Assembly (NCBI RefSeq): GCF_006345805.1
Contig: NC_043010.1
Location: 17,546,001-17,610,000, forward strand
Source of the DNA: Octopus sinensis
Taxonomy: Eukaryota
Length of the DNA stretch: 64,000 nt
Reading direction: 5' to 3'
Of the stretch, positions 5,320-60,145 are shown in pieces. The notes beneath the pieces were generated by a model, which did no database searches, was not told where the DNA came from, and saw only the letters and a program-made list of their open reading frames with translations. The first letter of the stretch is position 1, and every line of letters starts with the position of its first letter. The position numbers and the translations under genes are program-made.

Positions 5320-5369
<50 letters not shown>

Positions 5370-5695: not shown

Positions 5696-5758
<63 letters not shown>

Positions 5759-5842
5759 GTGTATGTGTAGGTACGTATAGGCACACATGTGTACGTATGT
5801 GTGTGTGTATGTATATGTGTTTATGTATGTATGTGCACACAT
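2930..5842. repeat. complex (TA)n/(TG)n/(TATG)n microsatellite field inside the Penelope element
   Basis: Read directly. Includes an internal tandem duplication of about 215 bp near 4410-4840 and unique islands at about 3225-3425 and 5395-5695. Confidence 0.95.
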
Positions 5843-5932
5843 TTATTTTTTATTTTTTTATTTTATTTTTTTATTTTATTTTATTTTATTTTATTTTTTT
5901 TATTTTATTTTTTTATTTTTTTTTTTTTTTTT

Positions 5933-5971
<39 letters not shown>

Positions 5972-6147
5972 TTTATATATTTTTATATTTTTTTATTTAT
6001 CTATTCTTTCATCTAACTTACCACTGACTCCTTGACCACTCCCCCAAGTATGATATTTTGCGCTATGCCTACCCCCAAAAAAGTCCCCCACCACCACTCC
6101 TTTAAACCTGCCTAAATGTATAAATGCTAATACAATTCTTGTTAAAT

Positions 6148-39878: not shown

Positions 39879-41222
39879 TTCAATACTTGTTTCAATCCAT
39901 GGTTATTTAAACATCAACTTATATACACTTGCTCTCCACTACCAATGTTGTTGTCGTCGTCGTCGTATTCTGTCATATCTCATTGACATAAATTAAGCCT
40001 CGCATAACTTGGAACCACCTTGATTCCCTGCCCTGATAATCCCAGACCTGGATCCACGATGTTCTGACATTGCCATGTAACATGGTGTCCCAGCACAGCA
40101 GCAGTAAATCTCTTCCATGGAACTAACAAACTTCACAACACACGCATGCTTTCTGCTGATTCTTGACTCAACCCCTTCAAACCCTTAAACTCCAATGAGT
40201 CATCGAATGTCCACACTATCACCTATACATACAATACTGACCAGTCTGTAGCAATTCAAGGGTCCACCTATACACATAGAGTGTGAGCAATGACCATAGT
40301 TTATTGTTTTTAGTGACCCCAACACTAATCCCTACACCCATTATTTCCTCCCCAGAGTATTATCCCTCTGATGACAGTCAAGGCTGATTTAGAGGACAAC
40401 GAAAAACCTGGCTGATGACAGTCAAGGCTGATCTGGAACCCAAGCTAGGCCCCCATATCTATGGCGTTCGCCGCTGGAATAAGGAGTGATTGGAGATCAT
40501 GTGGTCGTTAGCCTCAAATCGCTAGGCCTGGTCGGCGTTTGTGAGAGATGCAGCATTGAGGATGAATAAAGCCAGCTCAACCCACCCCGGGTGAATGCTG
40601 TCAAGTCAAGTTAAGTCCCAGAGTATTATCCCCCTGGAAATGTTTCCCTGTACAGAATGGGAAGGTGGATGCAATGTGGGTGATGGGTGGGGGAGAGATG
40701 AATCAGGAGATCCCTGACTGGAGGTGTAGAGGAGGGCTTGAGTGGGAGTGTAGAGGAGGGCTTGAGTGGGAGTGTGGAAGAGGGCCTGGAGGGAGGTGTG
40801 GAGGGGACACCAGATCAGACATCTTGAAGTTGCAGTGATCACTGTAGCAGTATCAGTGTTAATAAACACAGAGTAAGAAGATGGTGGTATGTCTGTGGAG
40901 GAGAGGCTGAAGTAACCGTCGTTGGGGATTCCATACTTAGAACATAATGAGTAACCAAAAGATAAAATGTCTAAGTATAGCTTGGTCTTGGAAGACTGTT
41001 CACTTAATCAAACCAATGATAGAAAATGATGGAAGCAACTAAATCCAGGACAATTCCAGAATAAACATATATAGCTTATTTCTTTAACATCCATAGATGT
41101 GAGTGTCCAATAGGGATTGGAGAAAATTCTTGATTACTGTATTCTTTTTATTCTTCTAAGTAATTCAGTTATTAGAAAGTAGGTGAGAATTGGCAGAATG
41201 GTACAGGTGAAAAGCAGAAGCA

Positions 41223-41264
<42 letters not shown>

Positions 41265-41654
41265 CCAGTAGAAGTGATACAAAAGGTTTGCCTCCTTGGC
41301 ACGGCCAGAATAATCAGGAAAATATTAGATAGCTGAGAAGAACGGATAGCATGGTACTGTAGGCTGGAGGCATCAAGCCCACAATGTATGCAAGACTCCA
41401 GGAGTTCCAACAAAACCTGAGATAAAAAGAATGGATAATAATAATAATCTTTTCTACTTAAAGCCAGAAAGCCTGAAATTTGTGGGGAAGGGGCTCATTG
41501 ATTGCATTGACCCCAGTATTCAACTGGTACTTATTTTATCAACCCCGAAAAGGATGAAAGGCAAAGTCAACCCCAGCATAATTTGGATGCAGAACATAAA
41601 GATGGATGAAAGCCACTTAGCATTTTATCTGAGAGGGCTATGGGCTTTACCTTG

Positions 41655-41689
<35 letters not shown>

Positions 41690-44080
41690 CCTTTCTACTA
41701 AAGGCACAAGGCCTGAAATTTGTGGGGAGGGGGATGAGTTGATTACATTGAACCCCCCCCCCCCGTACTTAACTTCTTTTATCAACCCTGAAAGTCAAAG
41801 TCAACTTTAGCGGAATTTGAACTCAGAACGTAAAGACAGATGAAATACTGCTAAGCTTTAATAGTTTGGCAGATCAGACTGGAGCCTGGTGCAGCCTCCT
41901 GGTTTGCCAGTCCTCAGTGAAACCGTCCAACCCACCCACGCCAGCATGGATGATGATAATGATGATGAATGATAATAATAAGAACAATGATGATAATGAT
42001 AGATTAGAGAGAAAGGGAGACGATATGTGAATTGTTAGGTTGCGAGAGAGAGGGGAAAGGAAAACTACAAGTGATAGTAGGGGAGAGGTTGTTACAACAA
42101 GAATGCCTGGTCAACGAGGGCTCACTCGAGATTAAACAATAACAACAATAATTATCAATTTGAAATTTATAAAAACAGATAAAAGAATTTATTTAACGTC
42201 ACAGAGATCAATAGATAGTCTTGTTTCAGAGGTAATTATTAATAAGGGTAAGGTGATTAATGATTACTGAATGTTATATAATTATACTTAACGAGTTCTC
42301 TTGTCTGTGAAATAGGTAGAGCATTGCTGTCAGATAATTTCTTTTAACTCTTTTCTTACCGTATTTCTGTTAAAATACAATGATTTTGTGTCAATTTATT
42401 TTGAAAACAAGGAAGAATTTGTTAAAATAACTTTGCCATTAGTAAGAGAATGTTTGGGACATAAATTAAGATGGAATTTTGATGAAGGTTTTTTAAAGAT
42501 CACTTTAAAACAATATTTAAAAAATTACTGTGATTAAATCATGAATTTCTTAAGGAAATTATAAATAATTTTCAAAAGTGTCTTTTTTTTCTTTGTTTTT
42601 GTTCAATTAAAATCAAAACTTGTTTTAATGATTTCCTGGTGTCTTTTGTTTAATTTTTTGTTCGTGCAAGCTGCAAAAATATGCCTATTAGCTTTATTCC
42701 TTAATTGTGGTGCAAATTCACAAAAAACTTTATGAACAGACGTTGATTTAACAACACACACTCACACATACAGAAACATGCCCTCATAAATGCACACACT
42801 TATACAAAAACAGAGGAAAAAATAATCATAATAATAATAAAAACCTGGTTATTGCAGAAATGCCAAAGTATGCAATAATTGGAACTGGCATCAACAAATT
42901 TTATGAATATTTCAGATTCTGTCTTTGTAAATTAAATACTTTGAAAGCAATTTTTGTAATTTTCTCCAATTCCTTTTGCTAAAATACTTCCTCTGCCACC
43001 TTACTCCAATATACTACTTTCAAAAAGTTTCCTCCAAATCTCGTCCAATCTATTTGTGATCAACCAAAAGCAAAAAAGAAATGGGGTCTATCATTTAATT
43101 TGGCAAACGCTAACAAACTGTTTCCTTTCATTGTTTCCTCTCTTATTTTAATGATTTAAATGTTAAAAGTCAGTCATTTTTTGATCTGTTGACTGACTTA
43201 AAATGTTTTATGTATGATGTTGTTGTAGTTGTCCTTCTTTAGCCTCAGAGTTCTGATTCAACAGACATACGATTAAAGATAATCTGCTTTTGGCCATTCC
43301 ATCCCATCCTACTCTAAATTATTCTGAATTCAGAGACACCATCTCTATGCAAGACTTAAGTTAATATTGGCTCATTTAGAGAAAAGAGCATGATAAAATA
43401 AAAAAACTGACTATAAATAATTATACTGTGTAAGAAAAAAACTATGTTGTTTATTGACTAGTATTAATTTTATTATTTCAGCTGGTATGGGAGACAACTC
43501 TGTACAGGTTTCCATGTTATTATGACCTTGTCAGTGAAATATAAGCTTAAATGTATTTGCCCAAGAAGTAATGGGAGAATCACTAAGTCTATGTACAAGA
43601 ATATACAGCAGTTGGTTGAGAAAGACAGACTTGCTTTCAGAAAAACAAACTCAGCACCGCCATCTGCAGAAATGCCAATAGTTATACTAACAGTAGTTAT
43701 ACTAAAAGAATTGATGTTATCTATTATTTCATTGTACAGATATTATCAACACTTTATCGTCCCTTGAATACATTATAATAGACTTTGAAACCTTTGTTAA
43801 TAATAATAACTGATTGGAATTGGAAATTAATTGGGACACAGCTATATAAAGGGTTAGGTTGCGAAAATGTGTGCTTGTGTTGGTGAACTTTGTGTTATCA
43901 ATGATTATTATCAGAATGAAAAAAAACAAAAACAGGTCAAATCTTAATGAAATTGGAAAAATGTGGAGAAATCTGTCTGGGAAGTTATCAAGTAGGAACT
44001 AACCATAATAGTGGAATCACTAAACATTGTCTTTAGAAATTTGTTCTCCTGCAGCTTAATTATATTTTATATTTTATAAA

Positions 44081-44310
44081 GGCGGTGAGCTGGCAGAAAC
44101 GTTAGCACGCTGGGCAAAATGCGTAGCCGTAGTTCGTCTGCCATTACGTTCTGAGTTCAAATTCCGCCACGGTCGACTTTGCCTTTCATCCTTTCGGGGT
44201 CGATAAATTAAGTACCAGTTACGCACTGGGGTCGATGTAATCAACTTAATACGTTTGTCTGTCCTTGTTTGTCCCCTCTATGTTTAGCCCCTTGTGGGTA
44301 GTAAAGAAAT
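44081..44310 (+). mobile_element. tRNA-derived SINE family A, best-preserved copy (tail type 1)
   Basis: A box TGGCAGAAACG, B box GAGTTCAAATTCC, body GGTCGACTTTGCCTTTCATCC...GATAAATTAAGTACCAG, tail AGCCCCTTGTGGG. Other family copies at about 154-297, 7366-7565, 22884-23035, 27721-27935, 28360-28510 (+) and 41440-41625, 41690-41855 (-). Confidence 0.85.
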
Positions 44311-46700
44311 ATATATTTTATATAATGACCCAAGTAAATTAATACATGTGGCAGGTGTGGGGGACATTTTGTTTATGTTTAAGAAATATAATATTCTAAG
44401 CAAAATTTAAACGTTCTACATGAACTCAGCAACATTGCAGCTGATGTTGTAAATTTTACCTTTACTATGTGTAAAGCACCGTAACCCTGCAAAACAGTCG
44501 GTTAATTGGGCAGGGGAAAATGTAAGGTTGTAAAGTCCCTTTGGTCCTGTCACATCAAGGTATGTTCAACCTCTCAAGTGTTTGCGCTACAAGAAAAAAT
44601 ACCCAGAACACCCTGTTGATGTTAGGAAGGGCATCCAACTGTAGAAACACAGCCAAATGACACATATGGACATCATTCTGTGGAACAAGTAGCTCCCATA
44701 GAGTGGGGATGACCATTCCAACCCAGAGTAACAAGGAAAACCGACATAAAGTTATCGCTGTTGTATATTATCTACTGCTTATCTATGAAAAATATTAAGT
44801 AAATAAATTGCAGAAAAGTTTATTATCCTTGAAAATGGGTTAATGGATATCTTCCAGGTAAGTTAAACATTGATGGCAACAACTTGAAACAAAGTTTTTT
44901 TATATTACAAAATAGGAAGAATTTTATGGAAAATTATTGATGTTAATTCAATGATTTTTACCTCCTGCACTAAAGAGCTCTGGAAAGCCAGATTATCTAC
45001 ATTTCTGATTAAGATCCAAAAATAGTCTTCATCACTTGAAACTTAATTGAAATCAAGGCTGCTATTTTCAGTATTTATAGAGAAGTTCACAAAGTAGGCC
45101 AAATTAAATCTCTTGCAAAAACCCTTTTACTATGAATTGTTACTGGAAATTCTTCCAAATTTTATCTATTTATATCAACAGTGTCCTCTCAAAATTTGTT
45201 GGTTTGCTCTACCAACTCCACTGTGCTCATTTGTCTGTTTCTCACCAGAATGTTTTAAAGCCTTGAGTTTCCTTTGTCTGACTTTTTGGCCTAACTATAA
45301 AGTTGACCTTTTAAGTTGCAATAATTACGTCCCAGGTTTTCTAAGTATTTAATGAAAATGCAGAGAGATCAGAGGCTGGGATGGATGAAAATATCTGCGT
45401 ACAGTGGGAGAATGTTAATGGTTATGTAAATTAACAATACAAAGCAATTGATAACATTTAGTATTTTAGAAAATTATCTAAATGGTAGAATTTCTTATTA
45501 TAATGGAAAATTTGAAGAAAATAATCTTGAAAATATTAAAATGCGGTAATTTGAAAAGTAAAGCAACAAGTTTAATGAAAATGAAAAGCAGAGTAAATGT
45601 ATATCAAGGTGTAATTTATGCGTTTATTAAAGGTGAATGATAAGCAATTGAAGAGAAAGAAATGAAATCATTAGTCACCTAATTTGTTACCTACTCAGAT
45701 AAACTTTGAATTGATTGGAGATAAAAGCTGTAAATTTAGTATCACAAACACATGTAAACAAATTTGAAATCTCTTCACCCCTATCGCAGACAATAAACTT
45801 TTCACTGTTTGCTGGAGTATCTACCCAGAAACATTTCAAGTAAAGGATTTAGAATATAGCTGGCTCCAATCAAAACATCATCTGAGATTAGTGTTTTTTA
45901 TCAACAGACAGATGGGAAATTTGTATAAAGATGTACTTTGAGTCTAAAACAATTTTAAGATTTCAAATATAACAGGAAAGTATTTGTTTGTTTCTTGTTG
46001 GGAAGGATGGAAAAGACTCTATAATATGCAAATTTATAACTAAGAGATGAATAAGGTGAAAACAGATGGAGAATTCTTGAATTTGCTGAGACAAATAGCT
46101 TCAATATATTGATCAAAAGCGTATTGTTAAAGAAAAGGCATGATGTAGATTGTTTCACAGCTAATTAAATCAAGTTGTTAATTACAGTACAATAATATTG
46201 CAGTTATATCACCAAAGACCAGATGTTTGGATTCATTTATGCCACATTTCTGTCAAATAAATTCTGGTAAATTCTTCAGAGTATTTCTTAAATGTAATTT
46301 TTAAAAGTTTTAGGATTAAAACAGAATTTTTCTGTTAGAATATCAGAAAAATATTCTTATATGTTGGATTTTAAATTTTTTGGTGTTGTATAAACTTTGT
46401 AAATTTATGAAAATAATATTTAAATTACATGAAGTTGTTTTTTTTTCTCTTTAGCAGGATTCACCAAACTTTATTGGAGGTGGCAACTCAAGCACCAGGC
46501 AGCCCAGTGACAATCATTTCAGGATCGCTAGCATAAAGTTCTTGTCAAATTCTAGGGTCAATATAATTGACTTATCTTCTCTCCTTGAAATTGTTGGTCT
46601 TGTGTCAAAATTTGAAACAATAGGCTATATTTTTCGTGGCTGTGGTGCCAAAGCTCAAAGACCGCCCTCTAGCTGCGCCACACTACATCTTCAGTTAAAG

Positions 46701-46979
46701 CACTGGTTCTCAACTATTATTTGGCTATGGACCCCTTTGATTATTATTTTATTCTGGTGGACCCCACTAACCATTCGATGTTTAAAGCCTAGTTTTACAG
46801 ATACTTCTTTTGAAATTCCTATATCGTTCGTCGCACATACATTCGCGTTGTTTGAACTCCGTGTAAAGTTAGAGAAATAAGTAATTCTGGACCCTTAAAA
46901 TAATATTGTGGACCCAATTTACTATTTTGTTTATGTGGACCCCCAAGAATCTTATATGGACCTCAGTTGGGAACCACTG
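46701..46979. mobile_element. hAT (Charlie-like) MITE
   Basis: TIRs CACTGGTTCTCAAC / GTTGGGAACCACTG; exact 8-bp TSD AGTTAAAG at 46693-46700 and 46980-46987. Confidence 0.88.
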
Positions 46980-47442
46980 AGTTAAAGTAACAAGGGAAGT
47001 CTTCTTCGTGTATTGGAAAATAATTTATTGTTACATCCATAAGGTGTTCATGTAATACAATCGACAGAAGCATTCGGATGAAACTGCGTAATATGACACA
47101 TGCAGAAAGCCTTTGTTAGAACACTCAATACTTGAGCTAATTTTTATATATTAAATACATATTCAGGTGCCGTGTGTGTCTTCTTCTTTGATCATTCCAG
47201 GTTGAATATGCAGCTGTAAAAACAGCTTTTAGGAGAATGCACGCAAACTCAAACCGAGATACTCTTTATTTTTGGCTTTCAATTTGGCTGTATTTGTAGG
47301 CCTTGCTCACAGAAAGTTCTAGTCAGACCACCAAACTATCACTTGAACAATGGTCATTCATTGGATCAAATCTTGATTGTGCACGTGATTGAATTGTGAT
47401 TTCTATGTGGTAAAATGTGGGATTGAATGAAATGCTGTATCA

Positions 47443-47455
47443 GTCCTCCTCCAGA
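47443..47455 (-). promoter_or_regulatory. polypurine tract
   Basis: TCTGGAGGAGGAC immediately before the 3' LTR start TGATACA on the minus strand. Confidence 0.55.
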
Positions 47456-49083
47456 CAACTTGTGAGGGAAAACAAGGAATCGATAACAGAGAGGAAAATG
47501 TGCATGTACAATGAGAAAAACAACCTAAACAATAGAAAAATATGAAAGCAAAACGTACACTTAACAAACAAGAAACAATTGTTTGTGGAAAATGGTTCAC
47601 AGTAGACTCCATGTTGGATTCAACAGTTCATGTTATTGAAAACGTTTGGGTTTTTTCCCCTAACATTTATTTTTCTAAAAGTTAGCTAAAAATAATAAGT
47701 GAGTGTATATTTTGTCGGTCAATGAACTCTTCTATTGCTTCATGTAATTCTGTTAGAAGTAGGTGTATTGACGGGTGCATTAGTAGTGAACAGTATGTCA
47801 CGTGTAAGCGGTGTGGGTGTGGTAGAAAAAGCGTCGAGTGTTGTTCACAGGAGTGACGAATCGGTTAGGCCTGCTTCAATCGATCGATGCTGTCTGATAT
47901 TTCCCTTGAACGTACAACACCATGAAGTTGTGTTTTACTTTCAAGACACGATATGGGCCGATACACAATGTCTGCAATGGATGTTTAATGGCATCATAAG
48001 GTATGAATAATTACGTCAATGTATGAATATCTGGTGGAACGAAAGTCTTGATCGTTTGTAGTCTCAAAGGCAATGGAGGTAACTCCGTCATGTATCAACG
48101 CATTCGATAAACATAACCTGCTGGAACAAAATGTCAATTGGCTGAAGCTGTAGTTAAAACCATTTGATCAGGTAGAGTTAGAGAGGAACCGTCAAGTAAT
48201 TCCGCCGGTGAATATCTCAGGCCATCCTTTACAGTGAACCGAATACCTAATAAAACAACGGATAAAACCTCCAACCAACGGTCTGAATCAGAATAAGCGC
48301 GCAGAGCTGCTTTCAATTGGCCATGAAAACGCCCGATCTTTCCATTAGACATGAGGTGATAAGCTGTAGTGAGGATTCGCTGGGTGCCTGGGAGGTTAGA
48401 AAGGTCGGCAGACAGACTGGATTCAAACTGATGACCTCTGTCAGCCGTTATGGTCAAAGGAGCTTTAAAACGAGAAATATGTCGGGCCATGAGGTCCTTT
48501 GCGACGGTGAGAGACGAGACGTCTATAATTGGCACGGCCCAGGCCACCTTGAAAAACCGCCTATGCAGGTCAGAAGATACATATTATCTTGAACTGGTGG
48601 TAATGGGCCCCACAATGTCAATGCGGATGTGTTTGAAATGTGCAGCGGGAGTAGCAAAGGTGCCTAAAGGGGTTTTGATATGGCGTTGAATTTTGGCTTT
48701 CTGGCACAGTATACATCAGCGCGGCCAGTTGCGAATATATGTTTGTGTACAAGGTCTTTTGCATGCAAGGACTTGAAATCAATTTCGCTGTAGCTGAAAT
48801 ACCAGGATGAGATAAATTATGAAGAGTGGAGAAAATAGTTCGTCTATGATGCTTTGGAACGAAAGGTCGAGAAAAACCAGTAGAAACACCACACAAAAAG
48901 AGGAATCAGCAGACTATAATGGTAATAAATGGAAATCCAAAGAAGTTGATTCCAGTGTTCGGTGTTGCAAAAATTTCTCATCTTCTTGATCCAAAGCGAC
49001 CTGTTGCAAATCAGCAGAATCAGGGGTATGTCAAAGCGTTGATTGAACGTGATATGCGAGCATCCGCCGCTGAATTATCAATA

Positions 49084-52000
49084 GGGGAGACCGGGGCAAG
49101 TTGACACATTTACTCTAGAGAAAATGCGAAACTACTTTCGGACGATTTAATGACCTCATAGTAGTGCTGTTAGTATAAGCTTCGCCCCTCATTTGATTTC
49201 GTCGCCGTTGTGAGAGTTTGTCTGCTACACGCGGACAACATTGGAATTTTCCACTTGGTAAGTTATTTTCGACATTGTTCAGGAAATGTGGTCTAAAGTT
49301 CTTCCGGGGAAAAACAAAAACCGGTGGTATGCTCTTTCCAGTGGCTTTTACACAGCATGCCAATGTGACCAGAGTTCCCCTCTCCGCACTCGTCATTTTC
49401 CCCACTTCCTTTGTCCCTTTTCTGGCAATAATTCTATCGAGGCAAAATTAGTTATTTTGGATATTGTTTAAGACTGCATTGTGTGTATTAAACCTTAAGG
49501 AGTTAGTAAAATATCTCTCACGACCCTATACAAATGGATTCTTGCGAAACCCTAGTGGTTTTCTCTCAGTGTTTACATTTACGAGGGGAATTGAGGTCGG
49601 GGCAAGTTGACACATATAAACAGGGGCGCATTGACACAGTGTGACAACTTGCTCCGGCCTTTGATAAAGTTGTTGTAGGGTGCTTACATTGATTCACAGA
49701 CTGTATCTGTCCCATTTTAACTAAGAGTGTTTGCTATTTGATTCATGTCTGGTACATTGGATCAATTCATTGAGTAACTTATGTACTGCTTGCTATAGTT
49801 TTAGATCAGCTCTCTTTATCTATACCAACCTATTCTATCTTCATAGCGCTATCTACTTAGTCAACAACTTGTATACTGCCTCAGCTTTGTAACCTGTACC
49901 ACTGATATATAAGCATGAAGTTATGCCATAACCAGGCATGCTTGAAACTGAAAAGTAGGTAAACACTCAGAGCTTTGTTTTGCTTTCACTGTTGGATTAT
50001 GCAATGAGCTAAATTGCTTTCTCTCTCTCCTTCCCCCTCTCTCTCTTTACAGATCTAGATCTACAATTGTCATGGTGCGACACTACAAACGCAAAAGCGA
50101 GAGGGCAACCCTTCCACAGGATGTAATCCAACAGGCTATTCAACAGGTCCGAGCTCGTATCATCTCCTTGCGAGAAGCTTCGAGGACATTTGGCATCCCT
50201 TTAAAATCTCTGTCTCGCTACTGCACCAAGGCCGATGAAGCAAACAACAACGATCACAGTCTTAGTGGATATAAAAAGCCACGGCAAGTTCTCGCCGACG
50301 AGTTCAAGAATCAGTTAGAGGCTTATGTTTTGGCTGCCGCAGAAATTACTATGGGCTTGCTCCAAAGGATGTGCGGAAATTGGCTTCTCAGATGGCAAAG
50401 GCAGATGGATGTAATATCCCTCCAACCTGGCATGAGACAGAAATGGCAGGTGAAGACTGGTTCTCTGGATATCTTCAACGACACAAGAATTTATGCATAA
50501 GAAGTCCACAGGCAACAAGCTTGGCACAAGCAACAAGTTTCAACAAGACAAATGTTGCTATGTTTTTCAACCAACTTGCTGAGGTGATGCTTCGGTATAA
50601 ATTCGATCCATTCAATATCTACAACATGGATGAAACTGGCATAACAACTGTGCAGCGCCCCGATAGAATTATTTCCAGAAAAGGAATAGAGCAAGTGAGA
50701 AAAATGACAAGTGCAGAGAGGGGAACTCTGGTCACATTGGCATGCTGTGTAAATGCCGCTGGAAACAGCATACCACCGTTTTTGTTTTTCCCCGGAAGAA
50801 CTTTAGGCCACATTTCCTGAACAATGGACCATCAGGCAGCGATGGAGGTGCTAATCCATCTGGTTGGATGTTTGAGGAGCAGTTTGTGAAATTCCTTCAA
50901 CACTTTGTGAGGAATGTGAAATGTTCAAAGCAGTCACCGTGCCTTCACTTGCTGGACAATCACGATTCCCATCTTAGTATCGAGGGGCTGACTTATGCAT
51001 CAGACAATGGCATCACCATGCTTTCTTTCCCACCTCACTGCACACACAGGTTACAACCGTTGGACAAAGCGGTCTATGGACCACTGAAGAAGTACACAAA
51101 CACTGCCATTGATGACTGGCATATCAACCATCCTGGCCAGACCATGGCCATTTATGACATTCCGTGTATTGTCAAAACTGCATGGCCATTGACTGCAACT
51201 CCGACGAACATTCTTAGTGGCTTTTCTTCTACAGGAATATGCCCTTTTAATCGCAACATCTTCACAGACAGCGACTTTGCACCAAGCTATGTCACTGACC
51301 GACCGGATCCTGCACTTTCAGCACCTGGGCCTTCAACAACTGCAACACCTGGGCCTTCAAGCAACATAGCCGCCAGGTCTTTTCTTTCACCATTTCAAAT
51401 CCGTCCACTATCCAAAGCAGGCCCTAGGAAAGAATCAACCAGAGGAAGAAAGAAACGTTGTTCTGAAATCCTCACTGACTCGCCGGTCAAAAGAACAATC
51501 ATAGAAGAAAAGACAAAAAGTAAAAGTAAAAAAGAAGACAAACATTGATAAAGAACGGGACTCAGTAAGGGTAGATCAATGAAGGGAAAAGGTCCAACTG
51601 TTAAGAAAAAAGTTCAAATTCAAGAAAGTGATACCTCTGATGAGGAAGAGTGCTATTGCTTAGTGTGCTGCGAGCCTTTTTACAACAGTAAAGGAAGGGA
51701 AGTGTGGCTTCAATGCTCTGATTGTAAAGGTTGTGCTCACGAGGCATGCACACCAGGTCTGACAATATTCACATGCCCAAATTGTGACTCTGATGATGAT
51801 ATGTAATGAAACCGTAATAATGTCCCTTGATCAAACCAACAAGCTTATATCGTGTGTTTCTGTTCATTAACATGTATGTTCCAAGAAAATGCATTCATGT
51901 GTCAACATACTCCATTATATGTGTCAACTTGCCCCGGTATCGGGGCAAGTTGACACATTTAAGTGGTCTTAGAAAATGCACAAAATATAAATCCAGACAA

Positions 52001-52143
52001 TAAGCAGATGAGATCTCTAGCTTCGTAAGTCTTCTGCTGTGGTTGATTTATGCGTGTAATACAAGATGCAGTAGAATACATTAAATAGTATTGCTCTGTC
52101 AGTGATAATGTAAAAAATGTAGTCAACCAACCCCGGTCTCCCC
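49084..52143 (+). mobile_element. pogo-superfamily (Fot-like, DD35D) DNA transposon
   Basis: Exact 13-bp termini GGGGAGACCGGGG / CCCCGGTCTCCCC, extending imperfectly to about 28 bp; TA TSD at 49082-49083 and 52144-52145. Confidence 0.92.
50072..51806 (+). pseudogene. pogo transposase with HTH, CENP-B-type HTH, DDE_1 and C-terminal PHD finger
   Basis: MVRHYKRK..ISLREASRTFGIP..; AGEDWFSGYLQRH; NMDETG, LLDNHDSH, HRLQPLD (35 residues between the last two Asp); CLVC...WLQCSDC..AHEAC...CPNC. Frameshifts near 50346 and 50778, TGA TAA at 51546-51551. Confidence 0.9.
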
Positions 52144-54693
52144 TACTTTTGATGTAACGGATATTCACAGTGAACTGCGGAATAAAATTAATTTTAGATT
52201 AGTTTTAGATTGCAGTGCGAATTTTAATCGAACGGTCGCCCTTCTAACAAATGCTGAAAATGTTTCACTAACAAATAAGCTACCAAAGGTTTTTTTTTTA
52301 CTAGAAGTGCGTATCTCGTTTCTGCCGGTTTCAGGCGCTTGGAGAACAAAAACGAAAGGGGTTACCAGGCATTGAGAACAAATTGTTGCAAAACTGCCGG
52401 TAAGTCTATCTGAAGCATCAGCTATTAAAGCTAATGGTGCTTCTGGAACTGGACGTATCAACAGAGTAACTCTCGGTAATTTCTCCTTAATATCATGGAA
52501 AAACTGTCAGAGCAGCTAAATTTATTGATACAGTTTTGTTCTTTTGGGGTTTTATTTTTTCGAGTACTTAGCAATTAGGTGAGAGGAAAAATTGTTGCTG
52601 TATAGTGTGGAATAAATCTTCTATAGAAATTAATAAATCCGAGAAATTCTCGTAACCTCCTTGGCGACGTAGGAACTGGAATATCTCGAATAGCATCAAC
52701 TTTTTCCTTCACAGGACAAATTCTAACTTTACCGATGACTTGTTCCAAAAATTGGCATTGATTATTACACCATGCCGTGATAATCTAGTAAAAATATGTT
52801 CCAAATGAAGAAAATGTTAATAAGTCTTCAGTGCAGGCAAAACCAAAATTTAGACCACGAATGACCTCATCGATAAATCTTTGAAAGGTATTAACAGCAT
52901 TACGAAAATCAAAAGGCGTTCTAATAAACTCGATTAGTCCAAAAGGAGTGGTTGTCGCCGTCTTAGGAACGTCGGCTGGTTCAATATGGATTTGATTGTA
53001 AGCGCGTATTATTAGATCGATCTTCGAGAAAGACACTACAACCGTGTAATGATGCTGAAAAATCATGAATACGCACGATAGGATATCTGTCTGGCACTGT
53101 TAAAGCATTTAAATGTATGTAATCACCGCAAGGGTACCAATCTCCCTCAGACTTTTTCAAGACAAAACGAAGCGGAAGAGGCCAATTACTGTTAGAAGGT
53201 CGAATTATACCAAAGTTCAACATATGACCGAATTCTTCCTTAGAAATTTTAAGCTTGTCCATGATAAGATGTCTGGGACGAGATGAAAGAGGAGAACCTT
53301 TCGTAACGATATGATGAATAACCGACTGCACATGACTCTTGTTACGGAATACAGTACGAGTAAATCTCGGAAACCGGTGAAGAATCTCGTGGAAACGATT
53401 GGATACAGATGGGACAAAAAAAAAGACGGTAAAAGACCTTGAAGACATAACTTGTGTTGATAACTCATTTCTGGTATCAATTAACCGCTTATGCCTTAAA
53501 TCAAGGAGAAGACCAAAATGGTGAAAGAAGTCAGCTCCGAGGATAGAATACGGTAAGTCTGCAGTGATGAATATCCATTTAAACAGTCGCCTTAGGTTTC
53601 TGTCCAAAGTAAAAGACTTTCTTCTGTATGTCGGAATAGGCGAATGGTGCACTGCTTGCTGGGTGATAGAAATCGGTTTACGTGAATCAGAAAGCAGGTT
53701 GACAGATGCTACACGCTGCTCCAGGGTCAACTAATAATCGTTGCTTGGAGATGGTGTCGAAGGTGAAAAGAACGCTACAAACTGATGATTCACTCAGAGA
53801 TTTAGTCGCATTCAATCTCTGGTTATTTGGCTTTCCTGACACTGCACAGATGTATTAAAAGAGCTGTAGAAATATATTTGCATGCATTTATACCGAAACG
53901 ACCTGATACTAGCAGAAAGAAAATGGTCTCTCGGAGGACTGGAAGATCACCTTCTCGTATTTTTACGGTTTCCGGACTTCGCACGCGAACGATTTCTTGG
54001 AAACTCCAAACATCGGAATTTATCTGTAAAAGCCTATATCCTCTCATCGGTCTATTTACGAAACATTGCTGTCTCGGAAGATATCGATGAACTAAGAGGA
54101 TAAGTTACAGGATTGTTGGTACTAGAAGAAATATCCACGATACCATCAGCTAATTCGGCAAGCTGCTGGATGGAACTTTGTTTCCGTTTGGTTGTTAAAA
54201 TAGCCTGCACATTAGGTGGAAGGCGAGAAAAGAATTTAACAGCTATTTCAGGCAAACTAGAAATTCGGCGCGTAAATGAAGTGGTGGTGTTGGGTCGGTG
54301 ATAAATGAAAGTAAAAATCTTCTCACAAGCTATTCCACTAAAGACGATATTCTGCCAAAATATTATCTCTATGAAGATTTTCTGAACTGAAGACTTTTGA
54401 ACTGAAGAAAAGAAGTTTTAAGAATACTGAAAGAGGATGACGAAGAATACATTCAGTGGAAACAAATTGTAGGGAATTTATGTTGACTTGTAAACACGAT
54501 TCGTCGGTGGTCACCACTTGTAACTGCAAGAGAAAGATGTGGAGTAAACTCTGTGATAAAGAAATGATTTACCACTTATCGTATGTGAGTAGCAAGTTCC
54601 ATGTTAGACGTTAGGTGTCATAAAACATTGCATGTGGCTGTAAGAAAAACTCCGCTGGGCGTAACGAGATTTGTGGATTTGTTTCGCCCTTCA

Positions 54694-54710
54694 ACGTTTG
54701 GGGTCACCGA
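54694..54710 (-). promoter_or_regulatory. degenerate primer-binding site, tRNA-Trp type
   Basis: TCGGTGACCCCAAACGT directly after the 5' LTR end (...TTACA). Compare TGGTGACCCCGACGT, the complement of the tRNA-Trp 3' end used by CsRn1-clade elements. Confidence 0.65.
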
Positions 54711-55384
54711 TTGTAAGAAGGGAAGGCTCCCTTATGAATTGGAAAATAATTTATTGTTAATGGAAACATTCAGATGAAATAGCGTAATATGACACGTGCA
54801 GAAAGTCTGTGTTTGAAAATCAATATATGAGCTAATTTTAACATATCGAATGCATATTCAGGCGATGAGACCATTCCAGGTTGAATAAGCAGCTATGAAA
54901 ACAGCTAACTCGTCTAGAGGCACTCTGAATTTTGGCACTCAATTTAGCCATATTTGTAGAGCTCGCTTTCGGAAAGTTTTAGTTAGACCACCGAACTATC
55001 ACGTGAACAACGGCCGTGGATTGAGTAAAATCTCGGTTGTGCGTTTAATTAAATTTTGATTCCTATGTAGCAAAACGCGTGATCTAATATAATATTATTG
55101 TATAAAGTAGTAGAGAAAGTACAACTACTTCACGTCTCAGTGCACCACCTATTGTATGCTGAAACTAAAGGAGTGGTGGCATTTCATTGGCATTAATGTA
55201 TGTGACGTTGTAAATTGTTCCAAAAGCTCTGAGTTGTGGCTTGCACTTAAAGCACGTAGGCAGCACCAACTCAGAATGTTATACTTACAAATATACCACC
55301 TACAGGTGAAATGTAATAATTAGAAATGTTAACGTGACATGGGTGCCTCTCTCTGCGTGTATGAAGTGATTTAACTAGCAAAAC

Positions 55385-55545
55385 ATATGCTGCGTGGTAA
55401 GAAGCTTGCTTCCCAACCACATGATTCCGAGTTCAGTCCCACTTCATGGCGCCTTGGACAAGTGTCTTCTTCTTTACCCTCGGGCTGACCAAAGCCTTCT
55501 GAGTGGATTTGGTAGATAGAAACTGAATGAAGCCCCCGTCGCGCG
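55385..55545 (+). mobile_element. tRNA-derived SINE family C
   Basis: GTGGTAAGAAGCTTGCTTCCCAACCACATG..GAGTTCAGTCCC..CCAAAGCCTT.TGAGTGGATTTGGTAGA. Other copies at about 24272-24440 (+) and 33790-33950, 36180-36305 (-). Confidence 0.75.
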
Positions 55546-55932
55546 CGCGTGTACATACATAGATACATACATACATACAGACTAGGAATCTGTCATTTAT
55601 GACTACGTGTGTTCCAGTTGATCCAATCAAGAGAACCTGCTCGTGAAATAAGCATGCAAGTGGCTGAGCACTCCACAGACACGCGTACCCTTCATGCAGT
55701 TCTCAGGGAGATTCAGCGTGACGCAGAATGTGACAACGCTGGCACTTTTAAACACATGTCCACATTTTTACCAGCAGAGAGAACCGAAGCAACATGAAAT
55801 AAAGTGTCTTGCTGAAGGACACAACTCGCTGCCTGGTATCGAACTTACGACCTTATGATCGTGAGCTGAATTGTCCAAACCACTAAGCCACGCGCCTTCG
55901 CCTCCCCCCACCCACACACACGTACGTACACA

Positions 55933-56804
55933 TGTGGTCTGATCAATAAGTATCCGGACTGCTGCCACAGTAACGAAGCTAAAGCAGGCAGAGTGAAACC
56001 GCTTGACAAAGATTGACATTGAATTCTGCTGTGCATGCGCACTAAGTTTTAACGTTTTAGCTCACTCATGCTGATTACAGCAGTGCTGGGAAGGAAGGTG
56101 TGTAACGTGTGATCATCGCGTTGACCATGACAGAGAAGGTCGTCACGGCGATTCCTGATCAGAGGCCTACGCAAAGTTACAGAAAGTGTAAGGAGAAGAG
56201 TGTATGGGCCGCACACAAGTGTATGAGTGGTTCAGACGTTTCCAAGATGACCGAAAAAATGTCGATATTGACGAACGTTCTGGGAGTCCCTCAACCAGTA
56301 GATTTGAGAAGAACATTGCAAATGTGTGTGCAGCTGTGAGAGGGAAATCGTCGAATCACCAATTGTGAGTTAGCAGTGGATGTGCAGATTAGTTACATTT
56401 CAGTTGAATCCATTGTCAGAAGATTTGGATATGAGACGCGTGTCTGCCAAAACTACTTTCAGCTGACCAAAAAGACACTCGGGTTACAGTTGCACAAGAT
56501 CTCCTTGATTGTGTTGAGAACGATGAAAACTTTACAAAGGCCTTTGAGCAGGTATCACCAAACTTTTAGCAAAATTTAATGCAGATTCTCTGCTCAACTT
56601 CCTCTGTCATGATCAATGCGACGATCACACGCTACAGACCTTCCTTCCAAGCATTGCTGTAAACAGCGGGAGTGAGCTAGAACGTTAAAACGTAGTGCGC
56701 ATGACCAGCAGAGTTCAAGATCAATCTGTGCCAAGCGGCTTCACTCTGCGTTCTTTAGTCTCGTTACTATAGCAACAGTCCGGATACTTACTGATCAGAC
56801 AAAG
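55933..56804 (+). mobile_element. mariner deletion derivative with about 135-bp TIRs
   Basis: TIRs GTCTGATCAATAAGTATCCGGACT... and the reverse complement at the right end. Internal N-terminal transposase (MGRTQVYEWFRRFQ..DERSG.PST; DMRRVSAK); no catalytic domain. Confidence 0.82.
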
Positions 56805-56919
56805 TATGTATATAATCAGATGTCGAAATTGTAACGATATTTGGCCACTAAATGATGAGGCAGTGAGCGTGTCCGCGTCCATTGTGTGTTTTCGCCTGCT
56901 TTTTCTTCTTTTTTTTTGT

Positions 56920-57690
56920 CATCTGTTCCTTTGTAGTCCTCCCGTGACATATTTTTATTTTCATTCATAACTATTACACGACACAGCTTTCCCCCCAGGC
57001 AACCGATTCTTTCTATTTCGTGCGACTTCTCCCTCTTTTTATTTCTGTGTCTGTCTTTTCTTCTTTACATTTATCTTTCTATTGGTTTTTTTCTTCTGCT
57101 TACCATTTCCCCACTCACTATCATTTTTTTCTCTATTTGCGTATTCTTCCTTCTCTTTCGCATCTTTCTCCCTATGAATCATTCTATTTCTACGGCTGTA
57201 TCTACCTTTCTGTTCTTTCTTATTTCTTTTTGCTTTCTCTGTCTATCGTTTCCACTTAATAAGTATCTTTTTCCTTTTTCCTTCTCACGTAGTTTTCTTT
57301 CAATGTTTGGTTCCTTTTTTCTTTCTATCGTTGTTTCTTTCTACACTCCCCGTTTCTTCATTTTTCTTTATCTCTTTCTCTGTTGTTTTTTTATCTCTGT
57401 ACGGCCCTTCCTCTCTCTCACTTTGTCTTTTTCTCAACCCACTCATATATTCTTTCCGTATACCCCCCCCCAAAGGCACCGCATGGCCAGCCTTTTTGCA
57501 TTGACCGTTCTCACGGTCAGTTGCAATTTTTCCAGCTCTTGATTTGTCTAAGACTTTAAATTTAGTTTCAATTCTTAGTTTATCGAACTTATATTAAAAA
57601 AAAAATTATACACATATTTTTCTGAGCCCGAAAAGACCACCATCTATCCTCTTTGCGTTTCTTCGAACAACACGTCTTATTGCTGTCACG

Positions 57691-57726
<36 letters not shown>

Positions 57727-58513
57727 GATAAAGACCACAGAATTCTGTTCGAGATTTTTGATAATGAAATATTTTTTTATCGTAAACAAAAAAAAAAAAA
57801 AAATGTTGTCACTACGAACAACAGACACCAAAATAGTTCGAAGGTTATTGTTCTTGAACTCGGTATCACAGCAGTTGCTATCATGAGTTTCTTGATGTTA
57901 GCTGGTCAGTGTGTTGCCGTTGCCGCCTGTCCATTTTTTCTGTGTTGTGACAGCGCTCTGGCCAGGTACTGGTTGTGCCACTGTCAGCTGACCGCCATCT
58001 TCTGTGTCCAGTCTTATGTCCACCGTCTGTCAGTGGTGGTTAAAATGCGCTGAATACATAGTCGTGCTCTTGCTCAGAAAAAGCGCACCAAAGATGAAAT
58101 GATTGTCAGATCCGGTTCCCCACGAAGTCTCGAATGGGCATATTTTTTGATGACGACGGTTGTATTGTAGCGAATTGCAATCGCGTTCTTGGGTTGTTTA
58201 CTAGTTTTACATTCGACTGCTAAATATTCCTGCTACATGTGTATGTATGTATGTATGTATGTATGTATGTATGTATGTATGTATGTATGTATGTATGTGT
58301 ATGTACACACTTGGCCAACCTTAATTGAAAATAGCCACACACCCACTTCTCTTTTCCGCCACACTGTTGACTCAGATCTTACGACTGATAGCTTATTTCC
58401 TTTGAAACTTCTTCTCACAAAACTCTGTGTTCAGTTAGAATCATCTTCTTCCACCTCATCAGACAATACGACTGTCACGACACGACTAAGAGATGTTTAA
58501 ACGTATTGGGTCA
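56920..58513 (+). repeat. direct duplication copy 1 (1.59 kb)
   Basis: Near-identical to 59328-60914; differs by a few substitutions and homopolymer or microsatellite lengths. Confidence 0.95.
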
Positions 58514-59327
58514 AGTGAAGTTTCCTCCCCCAGATTCCCCATCGTTTCTCTGTAACCGTGCCGTTTGCATGAGGTTCTTCTTAGTCTTTTTGGATGAGGT
58601 CAACTTTCTCTCTTCCCTCATGAAGTAAACGGCTGGAGTTGGTCTTATGGAGATCCAATATTTTTTCTGTCTTTCATACAAGACGTCAGCCATGCTTTGA
58701 GGATCTTGCTATAGCATCGTTCATATCTCTCCAGGTTAAGTGCAGTCTAGAATCTTGCAAATATGCCTTCCTACGTGCTTATCTCTCCGTATAATCTGCA
58801 CCATGACGTCTTCCCTTTTCCCCTATCTGTGTAAGTTAGTGTTGGGAGATGGTCCCGCAAGGATTGGAGTAGAAAAAGAAGCAAAAGAGCTCCAATCACC
58901 AAAGATCACATCATGTAATCTTCCGTTTTGGCAGATCACATTTTGTCCAGACTCCTTGGGATCTAAATTCTTCGGCCCTGGACCATTGCTCTTCATCCTC
59001 AGCTTTGATCACATGTATTTATGTATGGATCTTTTGATCTTGTTTCAGTGATTGGACTGCAGCCATGTTGGGCACTGCCTTTAAGAATTTTAGTTGAACA
59101 AATCAACCCCAGTACTTTTTTTTCATGGAGTTAAACAACTTGAAAATTGTTTAACCCATCTTAATTCTATGAAACAAATCAATTTGTCTCTGCCATAAGC
59201 CTATCTTTCAGTTCTGACAATCCCTGTCCAAGACAATCCAACAGGCTGACAAGCAATGCCATCAGCAACTTTAACCATTTCCTCGCACTTTCTTCTCTCC
59301 ATTATTGTGGAGGTCCTCGATCCTTTG

Positions 59328-60104
59328 CATCTGTTCCTTTGTAGTCCTCCCGTGACATATTTTTATTTTCATTCATAACTATTACACGACACAGCTTTCC
59401 CCCCAGGCAACCGATTCTTTCTATTTCGTGCGACTTCTCCCTCTTTTTATTTCTGTGTCTGTCTTTTCTTCTTTACATTTATCTTTCTATTGGTTTTTTT
59501 CTTCTGCTTACCATTTCCCCACTCACTATCATTTTTTTCTCTATTTGCGTATTCTTCCTTCTCTTTCGCATCTTTCTCCCTATGAATCATTCTATTTCTA
59601 CGGCTGTATCTACCTTTCTGTTCATTCTTATTTCTTTTTGCTTTCTCTGTCTATCGTTTCCACTTAATAAGTATCTTTTTCCTTTTTCCTTCTCACGTAG
59701 TTTTCTTTCAATGTTTGGTTCCTTTTTTCTTTCTATCGTTGTTTCTTTCTACACTCCCCGTTTCTTCATTTTTCTTTATCTCTTTCTCTGTTGTTTTTTA
59801 TCTCTGTACGGCCCTTCCTCTCTCTCACTTTGTCTTTTTCTCAACCCACTCATATATTCTTTCCGTATACCCCCCCCCCCCAAAAGGCACCGCATGGCCA
59901 GCCTTTTTGCATTGACCGTTCTCACGGTCAGTTGCAATTTTTCCAGCTCTTGATTTGTCTAAGACTTTAAATTTAGTTTCAATTCTTAGTTTATCGAACT
60001 TATATTAAAAAAAAAATTATACACATATTTTTCTGAGCCCGAAAAGACCACCATCTATCCTCTTTGCGTTTCTTCGAACAACACGTCTTATTGCTGTCAC
60101 GCAT

Positions 60105-60145
<41 letters not shown>

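What the first reader, a model, noticed from the sequence alone, without database searches (positions are those of the whole stretch)
49273..49439. pogo transposon carries an antisense copy of its own transposase upstream of the ORF
Seen: 49273-49439 is an inverted copy of 50661-50826 with about 14 differences in about 166 nt by eye. It lies within the same TIRs and lacks the frameshift present in the main ORF (CCACCGGTTTTT versus CCACCGTTTTT). A strong polypyrimidine acceptor (TTTACAG, 50052) just before the ATG suggests a 5' UTR intron. Known: hairpin derivatives such as Mu killer silence their families in trans. Inference: a transcript starting near the left TIR could fold into dsRNA across the DDE region, giving a built-in self-silencing or editing substrate.
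Basis: partly seen in the sequence, partly recalled or inferred. Interest (0 to 1): 0.72.

Follow-up and report, generated by a model that had tools for sequence, protein, structure and literature searches.

The report
Captured antisense fragment in dead octopus pogo
One dead pogo transposon copy in an octopus genome carries a 167-base backwards piece of a sister copy's transposase gene, probably a DNA-repair scar; it could form a hairpin RNA but is not a built-in silencing device.

Summary
Window 49273-49443 is the reverse complement of 50657-50826 (171 nt, 14 mismatches, 1 indel). Both arms lie inside one 3,060-bp pogo element (49084-52143) flanked by a TA duplication.

The interpretation mostly fails.
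- Six independent copies of this family in three Octopus species read straight through the site (CGACATTTTTGATAATTAG). Only the orthologous O. vulgaris locus shares the segment.
- The segment is not a copy of this element's own gene. It shares none of the host arm's five derived bases, three of which are also in copies L001 and L009. Its immediate flanks are 0.6-2.4% from those copies, but the segment is about 8% from their ORFs.
- It replaces 6 bp of the target and has a CATT microhomology at one junction. That pattern fits filler DNA captured during break repair.
- The host copy is dead, with four frame-breaking indels.

The hairpin potential is real: 160 bp pair in the minimum-energy fold on either strand. 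The TTTACAG acceptor is used in annotated gene models. One model at this locus places the antisense arm in an intron.

Molluscs are reported to lack a dedicated siRNA pathway. If the locus is transcribed, ordinary ADAR hyper-editing is the likely fate. This is a low-interest, known kind of TE rearrangement.

The parts
49084..52143 (+). Complete pogo-type DNA transposon copy (3,060 bp), dead, flanked by a TA target-site duplication (49082-83 and 52144-45)
   Evidence: Terminal inverted GGGGAGACCGGGG at both ends, and the empty-site join restores the host pol frame. DDE_1 E=1.1e-15; HTH_psq 19.4 bits, just under the cut-off. Collinear with Octopus copies L001-L009.
49277..49445 (-). Copy-specific insert: 167 nt of antisense transposase coding sequence (49277-49443) plus 2 nt (AA). 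It replaces 6 bp (TTTTGA/TTTGAT) of the canonical left arm. CATT at 49273-49276 is shared by target and donor (microhomology).
   Evidence: Alignments to six copies that read ...CGACATTTTTGATAATTAG...; 6-bp target loss; the junction string occurs only in the orthologue L004.
50657..50826 (+). Sense arm: the part of the host transposase ORF (DDE_1 region, ...DRIISRKGIEQVRKMTSAERGTLVTLACCVNAAGNSIPP/FVFPRKNFRPHFLNN) complementary to the insert. It contains the host's 1-nt deletion after 50778.
50072..51806 (+). Host transposase pseudogene. Relative to the family consensus (intact, 581 aa) it has -1 after 50345, -1 after 50778, +1 at 51527 and -10 after 51552.
49026..50052 (+). Intron of the annotated O. 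vulgaris gene model at this locus (P0169). Exon 1 is 48919-49025, in the flanking retrotransposon. Donor CAGGG|GTATGT, acceptor TTTACAG|. Exon 2 starts at 50053. The antisense arm lies inside this intron.
   Evidence: The spliced translation of the window is 183/184 identical to P0169.
49959..50052 (+). Candidate canonical 5' UTR intron of the family (donor AAAAGTAG|GTAAAC, same acceptor)
   Evidence: Gene model P0165 on another copy begins MKLCRDQACLKLKSR and continues into ...RSTTVMVRHY; the window equivalent translates MKLCHNQACLKLKSRSRSTIVMVR.
49093..49109 (+). Outer left copy of the terminal motif GGGGCAAGTTGACACAT. Further copies are at 49599-49615 (+), 49639-49655 (-, degenerate), 51897-51913 (-, degenerate), 51919-51935 (-) and 51942-51958 (+), with a degenerate outer right copy at 52122-52143.
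   Evidence: Six matches against 0.29 expected. The same layout occurs in L003, L002 and L006-L008, so it is canonical architecture and not nesting.
48134..53730 (-). Degenerate LTR-retrotransposon pol (RNase H to integrase region) into which the pogo element inserted
   Evidence: Weak RT_RNaseH_2 hit (E=1.1e-4, below the Pfam cut-off). RT-connection and integrase-like motifs were read in the translation. The frame is restored on removing the pogo element.

Best explanation
The segment is a locus-specific repair scar in a dead pogo transposon copy of an Octopus genome.

Origin. A double-strand break in the left subterminal spacer of this copy was healed by end joining or template switching. 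The repair copied or captured 167 nt of the transposase gene of another, already diverged member of the same family, in inverted orientation. It used a 4-nt CATT microhomology (6 of 7 over CATTGTT/CATTTTT) at one junction. It deleted 6 bp of the target and left 2 nt (AA) at the other junction. The event predates the split between the window's genome and the O. vulgaris reference.

Consequence. Any RNA that crosses both arms, on either strand, would form a stem of about 170 bp at 91% pairing with a 1.2-kb loop. In the one annotated gene model at this locus the antisense arm is intronic and the sense arm exonic. In a mollusc, which has active ADARs and reportedly no dedicated siRNA pathway, the expected fate of such RNA is A-to-I hyper-editing. 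That is the same fate as countless other nearby inverted repeats. There is no sign of selection for the structure.

Shown versus inferred. Shown: the structure, the boundaries, the absence from other copies, the foreign origin, the shared orthologue, the fold. Inferred: the repair mechanism, transcription, the fate of the RNA.
For: - Boundaries and single-element status: TA duplication, matching termini and the in-frame empty site.
- Absence of the insert from six independent copies: L001, L006, L007 and L008 from O. vulgaris, L003 from O. bimaculoides, L009 from O. sinensis. All read CGACATTTT(T/C)GA(T/C)AAT(T/G)AG without interruption.
- The diagnostic junction ACATTGTTCAGGAAATG occurs only in L004. 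L004 is the orthologous locus: 17.6 kb collinear at about 98.5%, with the insert differing at 2 of 171 positions.
- Foreign origin, by markers: the host arm has five derived states relative to the family majority (T18, T32, G34, A43, A60), three of them shared with L001 and L009. The insert has none of the five. It carries G18, G43, G45, G60 and A103, as L006 does (L008 shares four of these).
- Foreign origin, by distance: the host flanks adjacent to the insert differ from L009 at 1 of 172 sites and from L001 at 4 of 169. The insert differs from those copies' ORFs at 12 of 139 and 13 of 171 sites.
- All copies lie 2.6-3.9% from the consensus. The insert is about 5.5% from it, within the range of single copies over this segment.
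- Junction anatomy: 6-bp target loss and CATT shared by target and donor.
- Dead host: four frame-breaking indels against an intact 581-aa consensus ORF.
- Fold.
- No protein in 5.8 billion spans the junction ORF. No Rfam family matches.
- Literature: no dedicated siRNA pathway in molluscs (PMC12479628). ADAR editing mainly targets dsRNA from young, nearby inverted repeats, with octopus in the data set (PMC9989829).
Against: - Only six informative independent copies were sampled. All were reached through annotated proteins, so a minor subfamily carrying the insert cannot be excluded.
- The foreign-origin inference rests on about five informative sites in 171 nt, plus the contrast in distances.
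- That the filler comes from the same TE family is unlikely by chance. This hints at a process tied to transposon gap repair or ectopic homology search that I cannot reconstruct.
- No RNA, small-RNA or editing data could be examined. 'No function' is therefore a default and not a demonstration.
- The 2/171 orthologue divergence in the insert is compatible with neutrality, but too few sites are involved to exclude constraint.
Confidence: 0.75

Rival explanations
1. One reading: the antisense segment is a built-in feature of this pogo family, a self-silencing or self-editing hairpin carried by the element.
For: The arms lie inside one element and would fold into a long duplex. The antisense arm keeps an open frame.
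Against: Six of six independent family copies lack it. The family consensus has no such segment. The insert comes from a different lineage than its host. The host is a pseudogene.
Confidence: 0.03
2. An accidental 'killer' locus. Although unique, the locus is transcribed from a flanking promoter, and its hairpin or antisense arm feeds a pathway (piRNA, or ADAR-linked nuclear retention) that represses the family's still-active members in trans, as Mu killer does in maize.
For: The structural analogy with Mu killer: a partial inverted duplication of a transposase gene, read through from a flanking gene (PMC3440606). A gene model starts upstream in flanking DNA and runs through both arms. Perfect runs of 38, 29 and 19 nt occur between the arms. 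The locus is retained in two genomes. piRNAs are abundant in molluscs.
Against: The gene model comes from a pipeline that mixes transcripts, protein alignments and ab initio predictions, so transcription is unproven (PMC10700109). No dedicated siRNA pathway is reported in molluscs. Unlike Mu killer, the arms exclude the TIR and promoter region. Orthologue divergence in the insert (2/171) matches the background of about 1.3%.
Confidence: 0.07
3. Remnant of a nested insertion. A second family copy transposed in inverted orientation into the TA of ...TTTGATAATTAG..., and two later deletions removed everything except 167 nt of its ORF.
For: The target contains a TA at the right place. This would explain both the foreign lineage of the insert and why the filler belongs to the same family.
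Against: It needs two independent kilobase-scale deletions that remove both termini and leave an internal piece, in a host copy that has no other large deletion. No TIR or TSD remnant is left. The CATT microhomology at the junction is explained more simply by one-step repair.
Confidence: 0.08
4. In-cis template switch (FoSTeS/MMBIR or snap-back synthesis) that copied the element's own ORF 1.2 kb downstream.
For: The proximity of source and target, the inverted orientation and the microhomology are typical of replication-based template switching (PMC2621351 listed; my own knowledge).
Against: The insert lacks all five derived states of the host arm. Three of these are shared with L001 and L009 and so predate this copy's insertion. 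Insert-private changes (about 7-9) outnumber host-arm-private changes (2 plus 1 indel).
Confidence: 0.05
5. Assembly artefact (chimeric or mis-joined reads).
For: Repeat-rich context.
Against: The same structure, with 2 substitutions, is present at the orthologous position of an independent chromosome-level assembly (O. vulgaris GCA_951406725.2, OX597827.1).
Confidence: 0.01

Closest known systems
Mu killer (maize) and inverted duplications induced by Ac/Ds alternative transposition
   Same: [quoted passage not shown] It can form a hairpin RNA if read through from flanking DNA (PMC3440606; bioRxiv 10.1101/2020.01.07.897926).
   Different: Mu killer's arms are kilobases long and include the TIR and 5' region. 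It acts through plant siRNAs and RdDM, and its silencing activity was shown genetically. Here the arm is 171 nt of internal coding sequence taken from another lineage. It sits in a dead copy in an animal reported to lack a dedicated siRNA pathway. No activity is shown.
Nearby inverted repeat pairs as ADAR hyper-editing substrates (e.g. inverted Alu pairs; young repeats across Metazoa)
   Same: Two copies of a young repeat in opposite orientation within about 1-2 kb. The pair exceeds the >=50 nt, >=80% criterion used to define potential dsRNA (PMC9989829 methods). An intron-exon pairing geometry is possible in the annotated model.
   Different: Both arms lie inside a single element, and not in two separately inserted copies. 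Editing was not tested here.
Filler DNA / templated insertions at double-strand-break repair junctions (NHEJ, MMEJ, SDSA template switching, MMBIR)
   Same: A small target deletion, junctional microhomology, and insertion of a short stretch copied from elsewhere in the genome without a TSD or TIR (concepts: PMC2567098 and PMC2621351, listed; my own knowledge of P-element, Ac/Ds and mariner abortive gap repair).
   Different: The donor is a paralogous copy of the same transposon. This suggests homology-guided engagement, and not a random capture.
Drosophila hpRNA loci and mouse-oocyte pseudogene hairpins (my own knowledge)
   Same: Endogenous inverted duplications of a coding sequence that yield long hairpin RNA.
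   Different: Those loci are processed by a Dicer/Ago2-type or oocyte-specific Dicer pathway into endo-siRNAs. No such pathway has been detected in molluscs.

Membership tests
pogo group of IS630-Tc1-mariner DNA transposons | DDE_1 (pogo/Tigger-type) transposase catalytic domain | tested here: met
   PF03184 DDE_1 E=1.1e-15, 58 bits against a cut-off of 22. The nearest proteins are annotated pogo/Tigger-derived.
pogo group of IS630-Tc1-mariner DNA transposons | N-terminal psq/CENP-B-type helix-turn-helix DNA-binding domain | tested here: inconclusive
   HTH_psq scores 19.4 bits, just under the 20.4 cut-off. Several close homologues carry precomputed PF05225 or PF03221 and are named 'HTH CENPB-type domain-containing'.
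pogo group of IS630-Tc1-mariner DNA transposons | TA target-site duplication and terminal inverted repeats | tested here: met
   TA at 49082-83 and 52144-45. The first 13 terminal nt are identical in inverted orientation. The empty-site join is in frame.
Mu killer-type hairpin silencer locus | Partial inverted duplication of the family's transposase gene | tested here: met
   171-nt arms, 91% identity, 1,213 nt apart.
Mu killer-type hairpin silencer locus | The duplication includes the TIR, promoter and 5' region of the autonomous element | tested here: not met
   The arm corresponds to internal coding sequence (codons around the DDE_1 region), 585-754 nt downstream of the ATG.
Mu killer-type hairpin silencer locus | [quoted passage not shown] | not testable with these tools
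   Gene model P0169 starts in flanking DNA and spans both arms in its pre-mRNA. The annotation pipeline does not guarantee transcript support.
Mu killer-type hairpin silencer locus | Hairpin-derived siRNAs and heritable trans-silencing of the family | not testable with these tools
   No small-RNA or genetic data are available here. The literature reports no dedicated siRNA pathway in molluscs, including O. bimaculoides (PMC12479628).
Family-level (canonical) structural feature of this pogo family | Present in independent copies at other loci | tested here: not met
   Absent from six of six informative copies in three species. Present only at the orthologous locus.
ADAR hyper-editing substrate (inverted-repeat dsRNA) | Reverse-complement match of >=50 nt and >=80% identity close by on the same strand | tested here: met
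   171 nt at 91%. The minimum-energy fold pairs 160-161 bp between the arms. The criterion is from PMC9989829.
ADAR hyper-editing substrate (inverted-repeat dsRNA) | Clustered A-to-G RNA-DNA differences on both arms | not testable with these tools
   No RNA-seq access. The DNA differences private to the insert show no A>G excess (2 of 7).

The most novel reading that the evidence does not exclude
The locus could be a naturally arisen trans-repressor of a recently active octopus pogo family. Transcripts would enter from the flanking retrotransposon, as in gene model P0169. They would carry an intronic antisense arm that pairs with the exonic transposase region. The resulting dsRNA, or the antisense arm itself, would be channelled into piRNA production or ADAR-dependent retention and so dampen the family. 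That would make it a Mu killer analogue working without an siRNA pathway.
Probability: 0.05. Interest if true: 0.55.

Novelty: new member of a known kind. Interest (0 to 1): 0.15.

Why it matters
As it stands, it matters little. Rearranged transposon copies with internal inverted filler are a known by-product of break repair, and nearby inverted repeats are routine ADAR substrates.

It has modest value in three respects:
- It is a clean, datable example of a paralogue-templated insertion inside a DNA transposon. The target, the junctions and the lineage of the donor are all defined.
- The insert's private variants make it a uniquely mappable test locus. It could show what a cephalopod does with a long intron-exon duplex, given heavy ADAR activity and the reported lack of an siRNA pathway.
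- It is a reminder that 'one element, odd internal repeats' has to be checked against other family copies before a function is proposed.

Tried and rejected
- Nested or adjacent elements. Three same-orientation copies of the terminal motif first suggested that the segment belonged to a different, nested element. I rejected this. The full multi-motif architecture, including the 48-nt palindrome at 51915-51962, is collinear in L002, L003 and L006-L008. The pol empty-site test shows one insertion.

- ADAR-edited cDNA as donor. In the first 5-sequence alignment the insert seemed to have an excess of A>G changes on the sense strand. With 11 sequences, several of these proved to be lineage markers. 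Only 2 of 7 private changes are A>G. Rejected.

- Purifying selection on the antisense arm. Its differences from the host arm include about 8 amino-acid changes in 57 codons, so there is no sign of constraint.

- Search for the junction-spanning 107-aa frame in 5.8 billion proteins. No hit covered the junction. This is weak evidence, because eukaryotic gene callers would rarely call it.

- Exact look-ups. The window's 268-aa ORF and P0002 returned nothing.

- Pfam on the retrotransposon. No integrase hit on the flanking ORFs and only a sub-threshold RNase H hit. The identification of the host as an LTR-retrotransposon pol therefore rests partly on motifs I read in the translation.

- Rfam on 48800-52400: no family.

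- Sandbox access. L003 and L006-L009 were not exposed to the script sandbox. I imported them through an alignment file.

- 'Young cluster' check. The host is not uniformly close to L001 and L009 (1.5-2% in the mid-ORF, 4-7% elsewhere). I therefore rest the foreign-origin claim on shared derived states and the immediately adjacent flanks, and not on whole-element distance.
Full report
**1.

The repeat finder and BLAST both recover the inverted repeat. Arms 49273-49443 and 50657-50826 align over 171 columns with 14 mismatches and one 1-nt indel (91.2%, E = 6.6e-64). Turned to the sense orientation, the upstream arm reads ...DRIIARKGTKEVGKMTSAERGTLVTLACCVKATGKSIPPVFVFPRKNFRPHFLNNV with no frameshift. 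The main ORF has lost one base after 50778.

**2. What surrounds it**

The ORF from 50072 encodes a pogo-type transposase. DDE_1 scores E = 1.1e-15 and HTH_psq falls just under its cut-off. The best relatives are Octopus proteins: O. vulgaris at 80% and O. bimaculoides at 87%.

The terminal motif GGGGCAAGTTGACACAT occurs six times, against 0.29 expected, and three copies share an orientation. That first suggested nesting. Two tests settle the matter.
- Empty-site test. The element is bounded by GGGGAGACCGGGG... termini at 49084 and 52143 with TA on each side. Deleting it together with one TA joins the minus-strand flanks into one frame...QFTVNIRYIKSIDNSAADARISRSINAL.... This lies in what looks like an LTR-retrotransposon pol. 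The support for that is a sub-threshold RT_RNaseH_2 hit plus RT-connection and integrase-like motifs read.
- Comparison with other copies. The whole multi-motif layout, including the 48-nt palindrome at 51915-51962, is collinear in other copies.

So this is one element with a complex but canonical terminal architecture, and both arms lie inside it.

**3. Do other copies carry the segment?**

I fetched nine Octopus loci through annotated proteins. Six independent copies retain the left arm: L001, L006, L007 and L008 (O. vulgaris), L003 (O. bimaculoides) and L009 (O. sinensis). All six read ...TTATTTTCGACATTTTTGATAATTAGTTATTTTGG... without interruption. L002 and L005 are 5'-truncated and uninformative.

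The diagnostic junction ACATTGTTCAGGAAATG occurs only in L004. L004 is not an independent copy. It is the orthologous locus in the O. vulgaris reference (OX597827.1, about 21.6 Mb), collinear with window 40844-58425 at about 98.5%. Its insert differs from the window's at 2 of 171 positions.

The segment is therefore real, not an assembly artefact, and older than the split between the two genomes. It is specific to this locus.

**4. Anatomy of the insertion**

Relative to the canonical arm, 167 nt of antisense transposase sequence (49277-49443) plus AA replace 6 bp (TTTTGA or TTTGAT, depending on alignment). The CATT at 49273-49276 is shared by target and donor, and 6 of 7 positions match over CATTGTT/CATTTTT. 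The insert has no TIR and no TSD of its own.

This is the signature of filler DNA or a templated insertion at a repaired break. It is not the signature of transposition.

**5. Whose transposase gene is it?**

An 11-row alignment of the insert, the host arm, their orthologues and seven other copies shows the following.
- The host arm carries five derived states relative to the family majority: T18, T32, G34, A43 and A60. Three of them are shared with L001 and L009, which are copies at other loci. Those states therefore predate this copy's insertion.
- The insert has none of the five. It carries G18, G43, G45, G60 and A103, as L006 does; L008 shares four of these.
- The host sequence immediately flanking the insert differs from L009 at 1 of 172 sites and from L001 at 4 of 169. 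The insert differs from those copies' ORFs at 12 of 139 and 13 of 171 sites.

A nine-copy full-length alignment shows a star-like family in which each copy is 2.6-3.9% from the consensus; the host is at 2.6%. The insert is about 5.5% from the consensus, within the range of single copies over this short segment.

The two arms are thus independent lineages from the family root. The segment was templated from another family member and not from the element's own ORF.

One caveat applies. The host is not uniformly close to L001 and L009 along its length. The inference rests on shared derived states and the adjacent flanks, which amounts to about five informative sites.

**6. State of the host copy**

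Against an intact 581-aa consensus ORF, the host has four frame-breaking indels: -1 after 50345, -1 after 50778, +1 at 51527 and -10 after 51552. It cannot make transposase, so nothing remains to self-regulate in cis.

**7. Transcription and the splice site**

P0169 (O. vulgaris) is a model at this very locus.
- Exon 1 is window 48919-49025, in the flanking retrotransposon.
- The intron is 49026-50052 (GT...AG).
- Exon 2 starts at 50053 and runs through the ATG at 50072 into the window's own frameshifted tail.

The window's spliced translation matches P0169 at 183 of 184 residues. The antisense arm is inside that intron and the sense arm is in exon 2.

Models on other copies (P0164, P0165, P0201) splice different upstream exons into the same acceptor. 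P0165 indicates a canonical 94-nt 5' UTR intron (49959-50052).

The O. vulgaris annotation merged Iso-Seq and RNA-seq with protein alignments and ab initio calls (PMC10700109). These models are therefore compatible with transcription but do not prove it.

**8. Would it fold, and what would happen?**

In the minimum-energy fold of 49027-50900, 160 inter-arm pairs form on the plus strand and 161 on the minus strand. The duplex energy is -275 and -288 kcal/mol, against -61 +/- 6 for shuffled arms. Perfect runs of 38, 29 and 19 nt exist. The hairpin potential is real on either strand. That includes read-through from the host retrotransposon, which runs the opposite way.

Two published findings bear on the fate of such RNA.
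- A 32-species survey that includes O. bimaculoides found no dedicated siRNA Argonaute or Dicer and no endo-siRNA signature in molluscs. piRNAs are abundant (PMC12479628).
- ADAR editing across Metazoa, octopus included, mainly targets dsRNA formed by young, nearby inverted repeats (PMC9989829).

The most likely fate of a transcript through this locus is ordinary A-to-I hyper-editing. A Mu killer-like siRNA route (PMC3440606) is unlikely here. Orthologue divergence in the insert (2/171) matches the local background of about 1.3%, so there is no sign of constraint.

**9. Comparison with known systems**

In structure this is a small analogue of Mu killer and of the inverted duplications induced by Ac/Ds alternative transposition. 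In mechanism of origin it is a templated insertion at a repair junction. In likely RNA fate it belongs with inverted-repeat ADAR substrates.

It fails one defining feature of Mu killer, because the arms exclude the TIR and promoter region. It also fails the test for a canonical family feature. Transcription, small RNAs and trans-silencing could not be tested.

**10. Verdict**

The best explanation is a locus-specific, paralogue-templated repair scar in a dead pogo copy, with incidental hairpin potential (confidence 0.75). Novelty: a new member of a known kind. Interest: 0.15.

The most novel reading not excluded is an accidental trans-repressor locus working through piRNAs or ADAR. I give it about 5%.

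Noticed in passing
window 49093-49109, 49599-49615, 49639-49655, 51897-51913, 51919-51935, 51942-51958, 52122-52143; also L002, L003, L006-L008: The family's ends carry several copies of a 17-27-nt motif (GGGGCAAGTTGACACAT). There is an outer and an inner copy on the left, about 340 bp apart in canonical copies. On the right, an inner pair forms a 48-nt palindrome (51915-51962) about 200 bp from the outer end. This recalls the multiple transposase-binding sites of IR/DR-type Tc1/mariner elements, but it is asymmetric. The layout is conserved across three species.
   Followed up: partly
window 49084-49112 vs L001 4241-4290, L006, L007, L009 (alignments A1, A6): The outermost left motif is single in the window, L003 and L008. 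It is tandemly doubled (a 17-nt unit) in L001, L006, L007 and L009, so the number of terminal motifs is polymorphic.
   Followed up: partly
window 50038-50053 (acceptor TTTACAG|A); proteins P0164, P0165, P0169, P0201: At least four annotated Octopus gene models splice unrelated upstream exons into the acceptor 20 nt upstream of the transposase ATG. They give chimeric N-termini (...RSTIVMVRHY...). This is the arrangement through which host-transposase fusion genes are thought to arise.
   Followed up: partly
family consensus from window + L001-L009; window 51579-51806: The majority consensus of nine copies encodes an intact 581-aa transposase. It ends in a Cys-rich finger (CYCLVCC...CSDCKGWAHEAC...CPNC) that Pfam does not recognise. 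Copies are only 2.6-3.9% from the consensus, so the family was active fairly recently in the O. vulgaris / O. sinensis / O. bimaculoides lineage.
   Followed up: partly
window 48134-49083 and 52146-53730, minus strand: The pogo element sits in a degenerate LTR-retrotransposon pol, between the RNase H region and the integrase. Only a sub-threshold RT_RNaseH_2 Pfam hit was obtained.
   Followed up: partly
window 40844-58425 vs L004 (O. vulgaris OX597827.1:21592274-21609855): The window is orthologous to this O. vulgaris region at 98.4-98.7%. It therefore comes from a very close relative or another haplotype, not from that assembly. Window ~56.9-58.4 kb and 59324-60826 both match L004 16088-17582, a direct repeat of about 1.5 kb that could be an LTR pair or a local duplication.
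   Followed up: no
window 49717-49795: An approximately 80-bp stretch of the 5' UTR region is present in the window and most copies but absent from L001, which has a copy-specific deletion. L009 carries an insertion of about 100 bp inside the inner left motif and has lost its 3' end.
   Followed up: no
window 4001-6000: Very strong strand asymmetry (GC skew 0.63, AT skew -0.26, GC 27%), with long overlapping ORFs on both strands. This is probably a strand-biased tandem or simple repeat.
   Followed up: no
window 9604-11414, minus strand: Two overlapping ORFs hit RVT_1 (E=2.9e-31) and zf-RVT (E=1e-8), which indicates a retrotransposon reverse-transcriptase fragment. The local GC content rises to 51%.
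   Followed up: no
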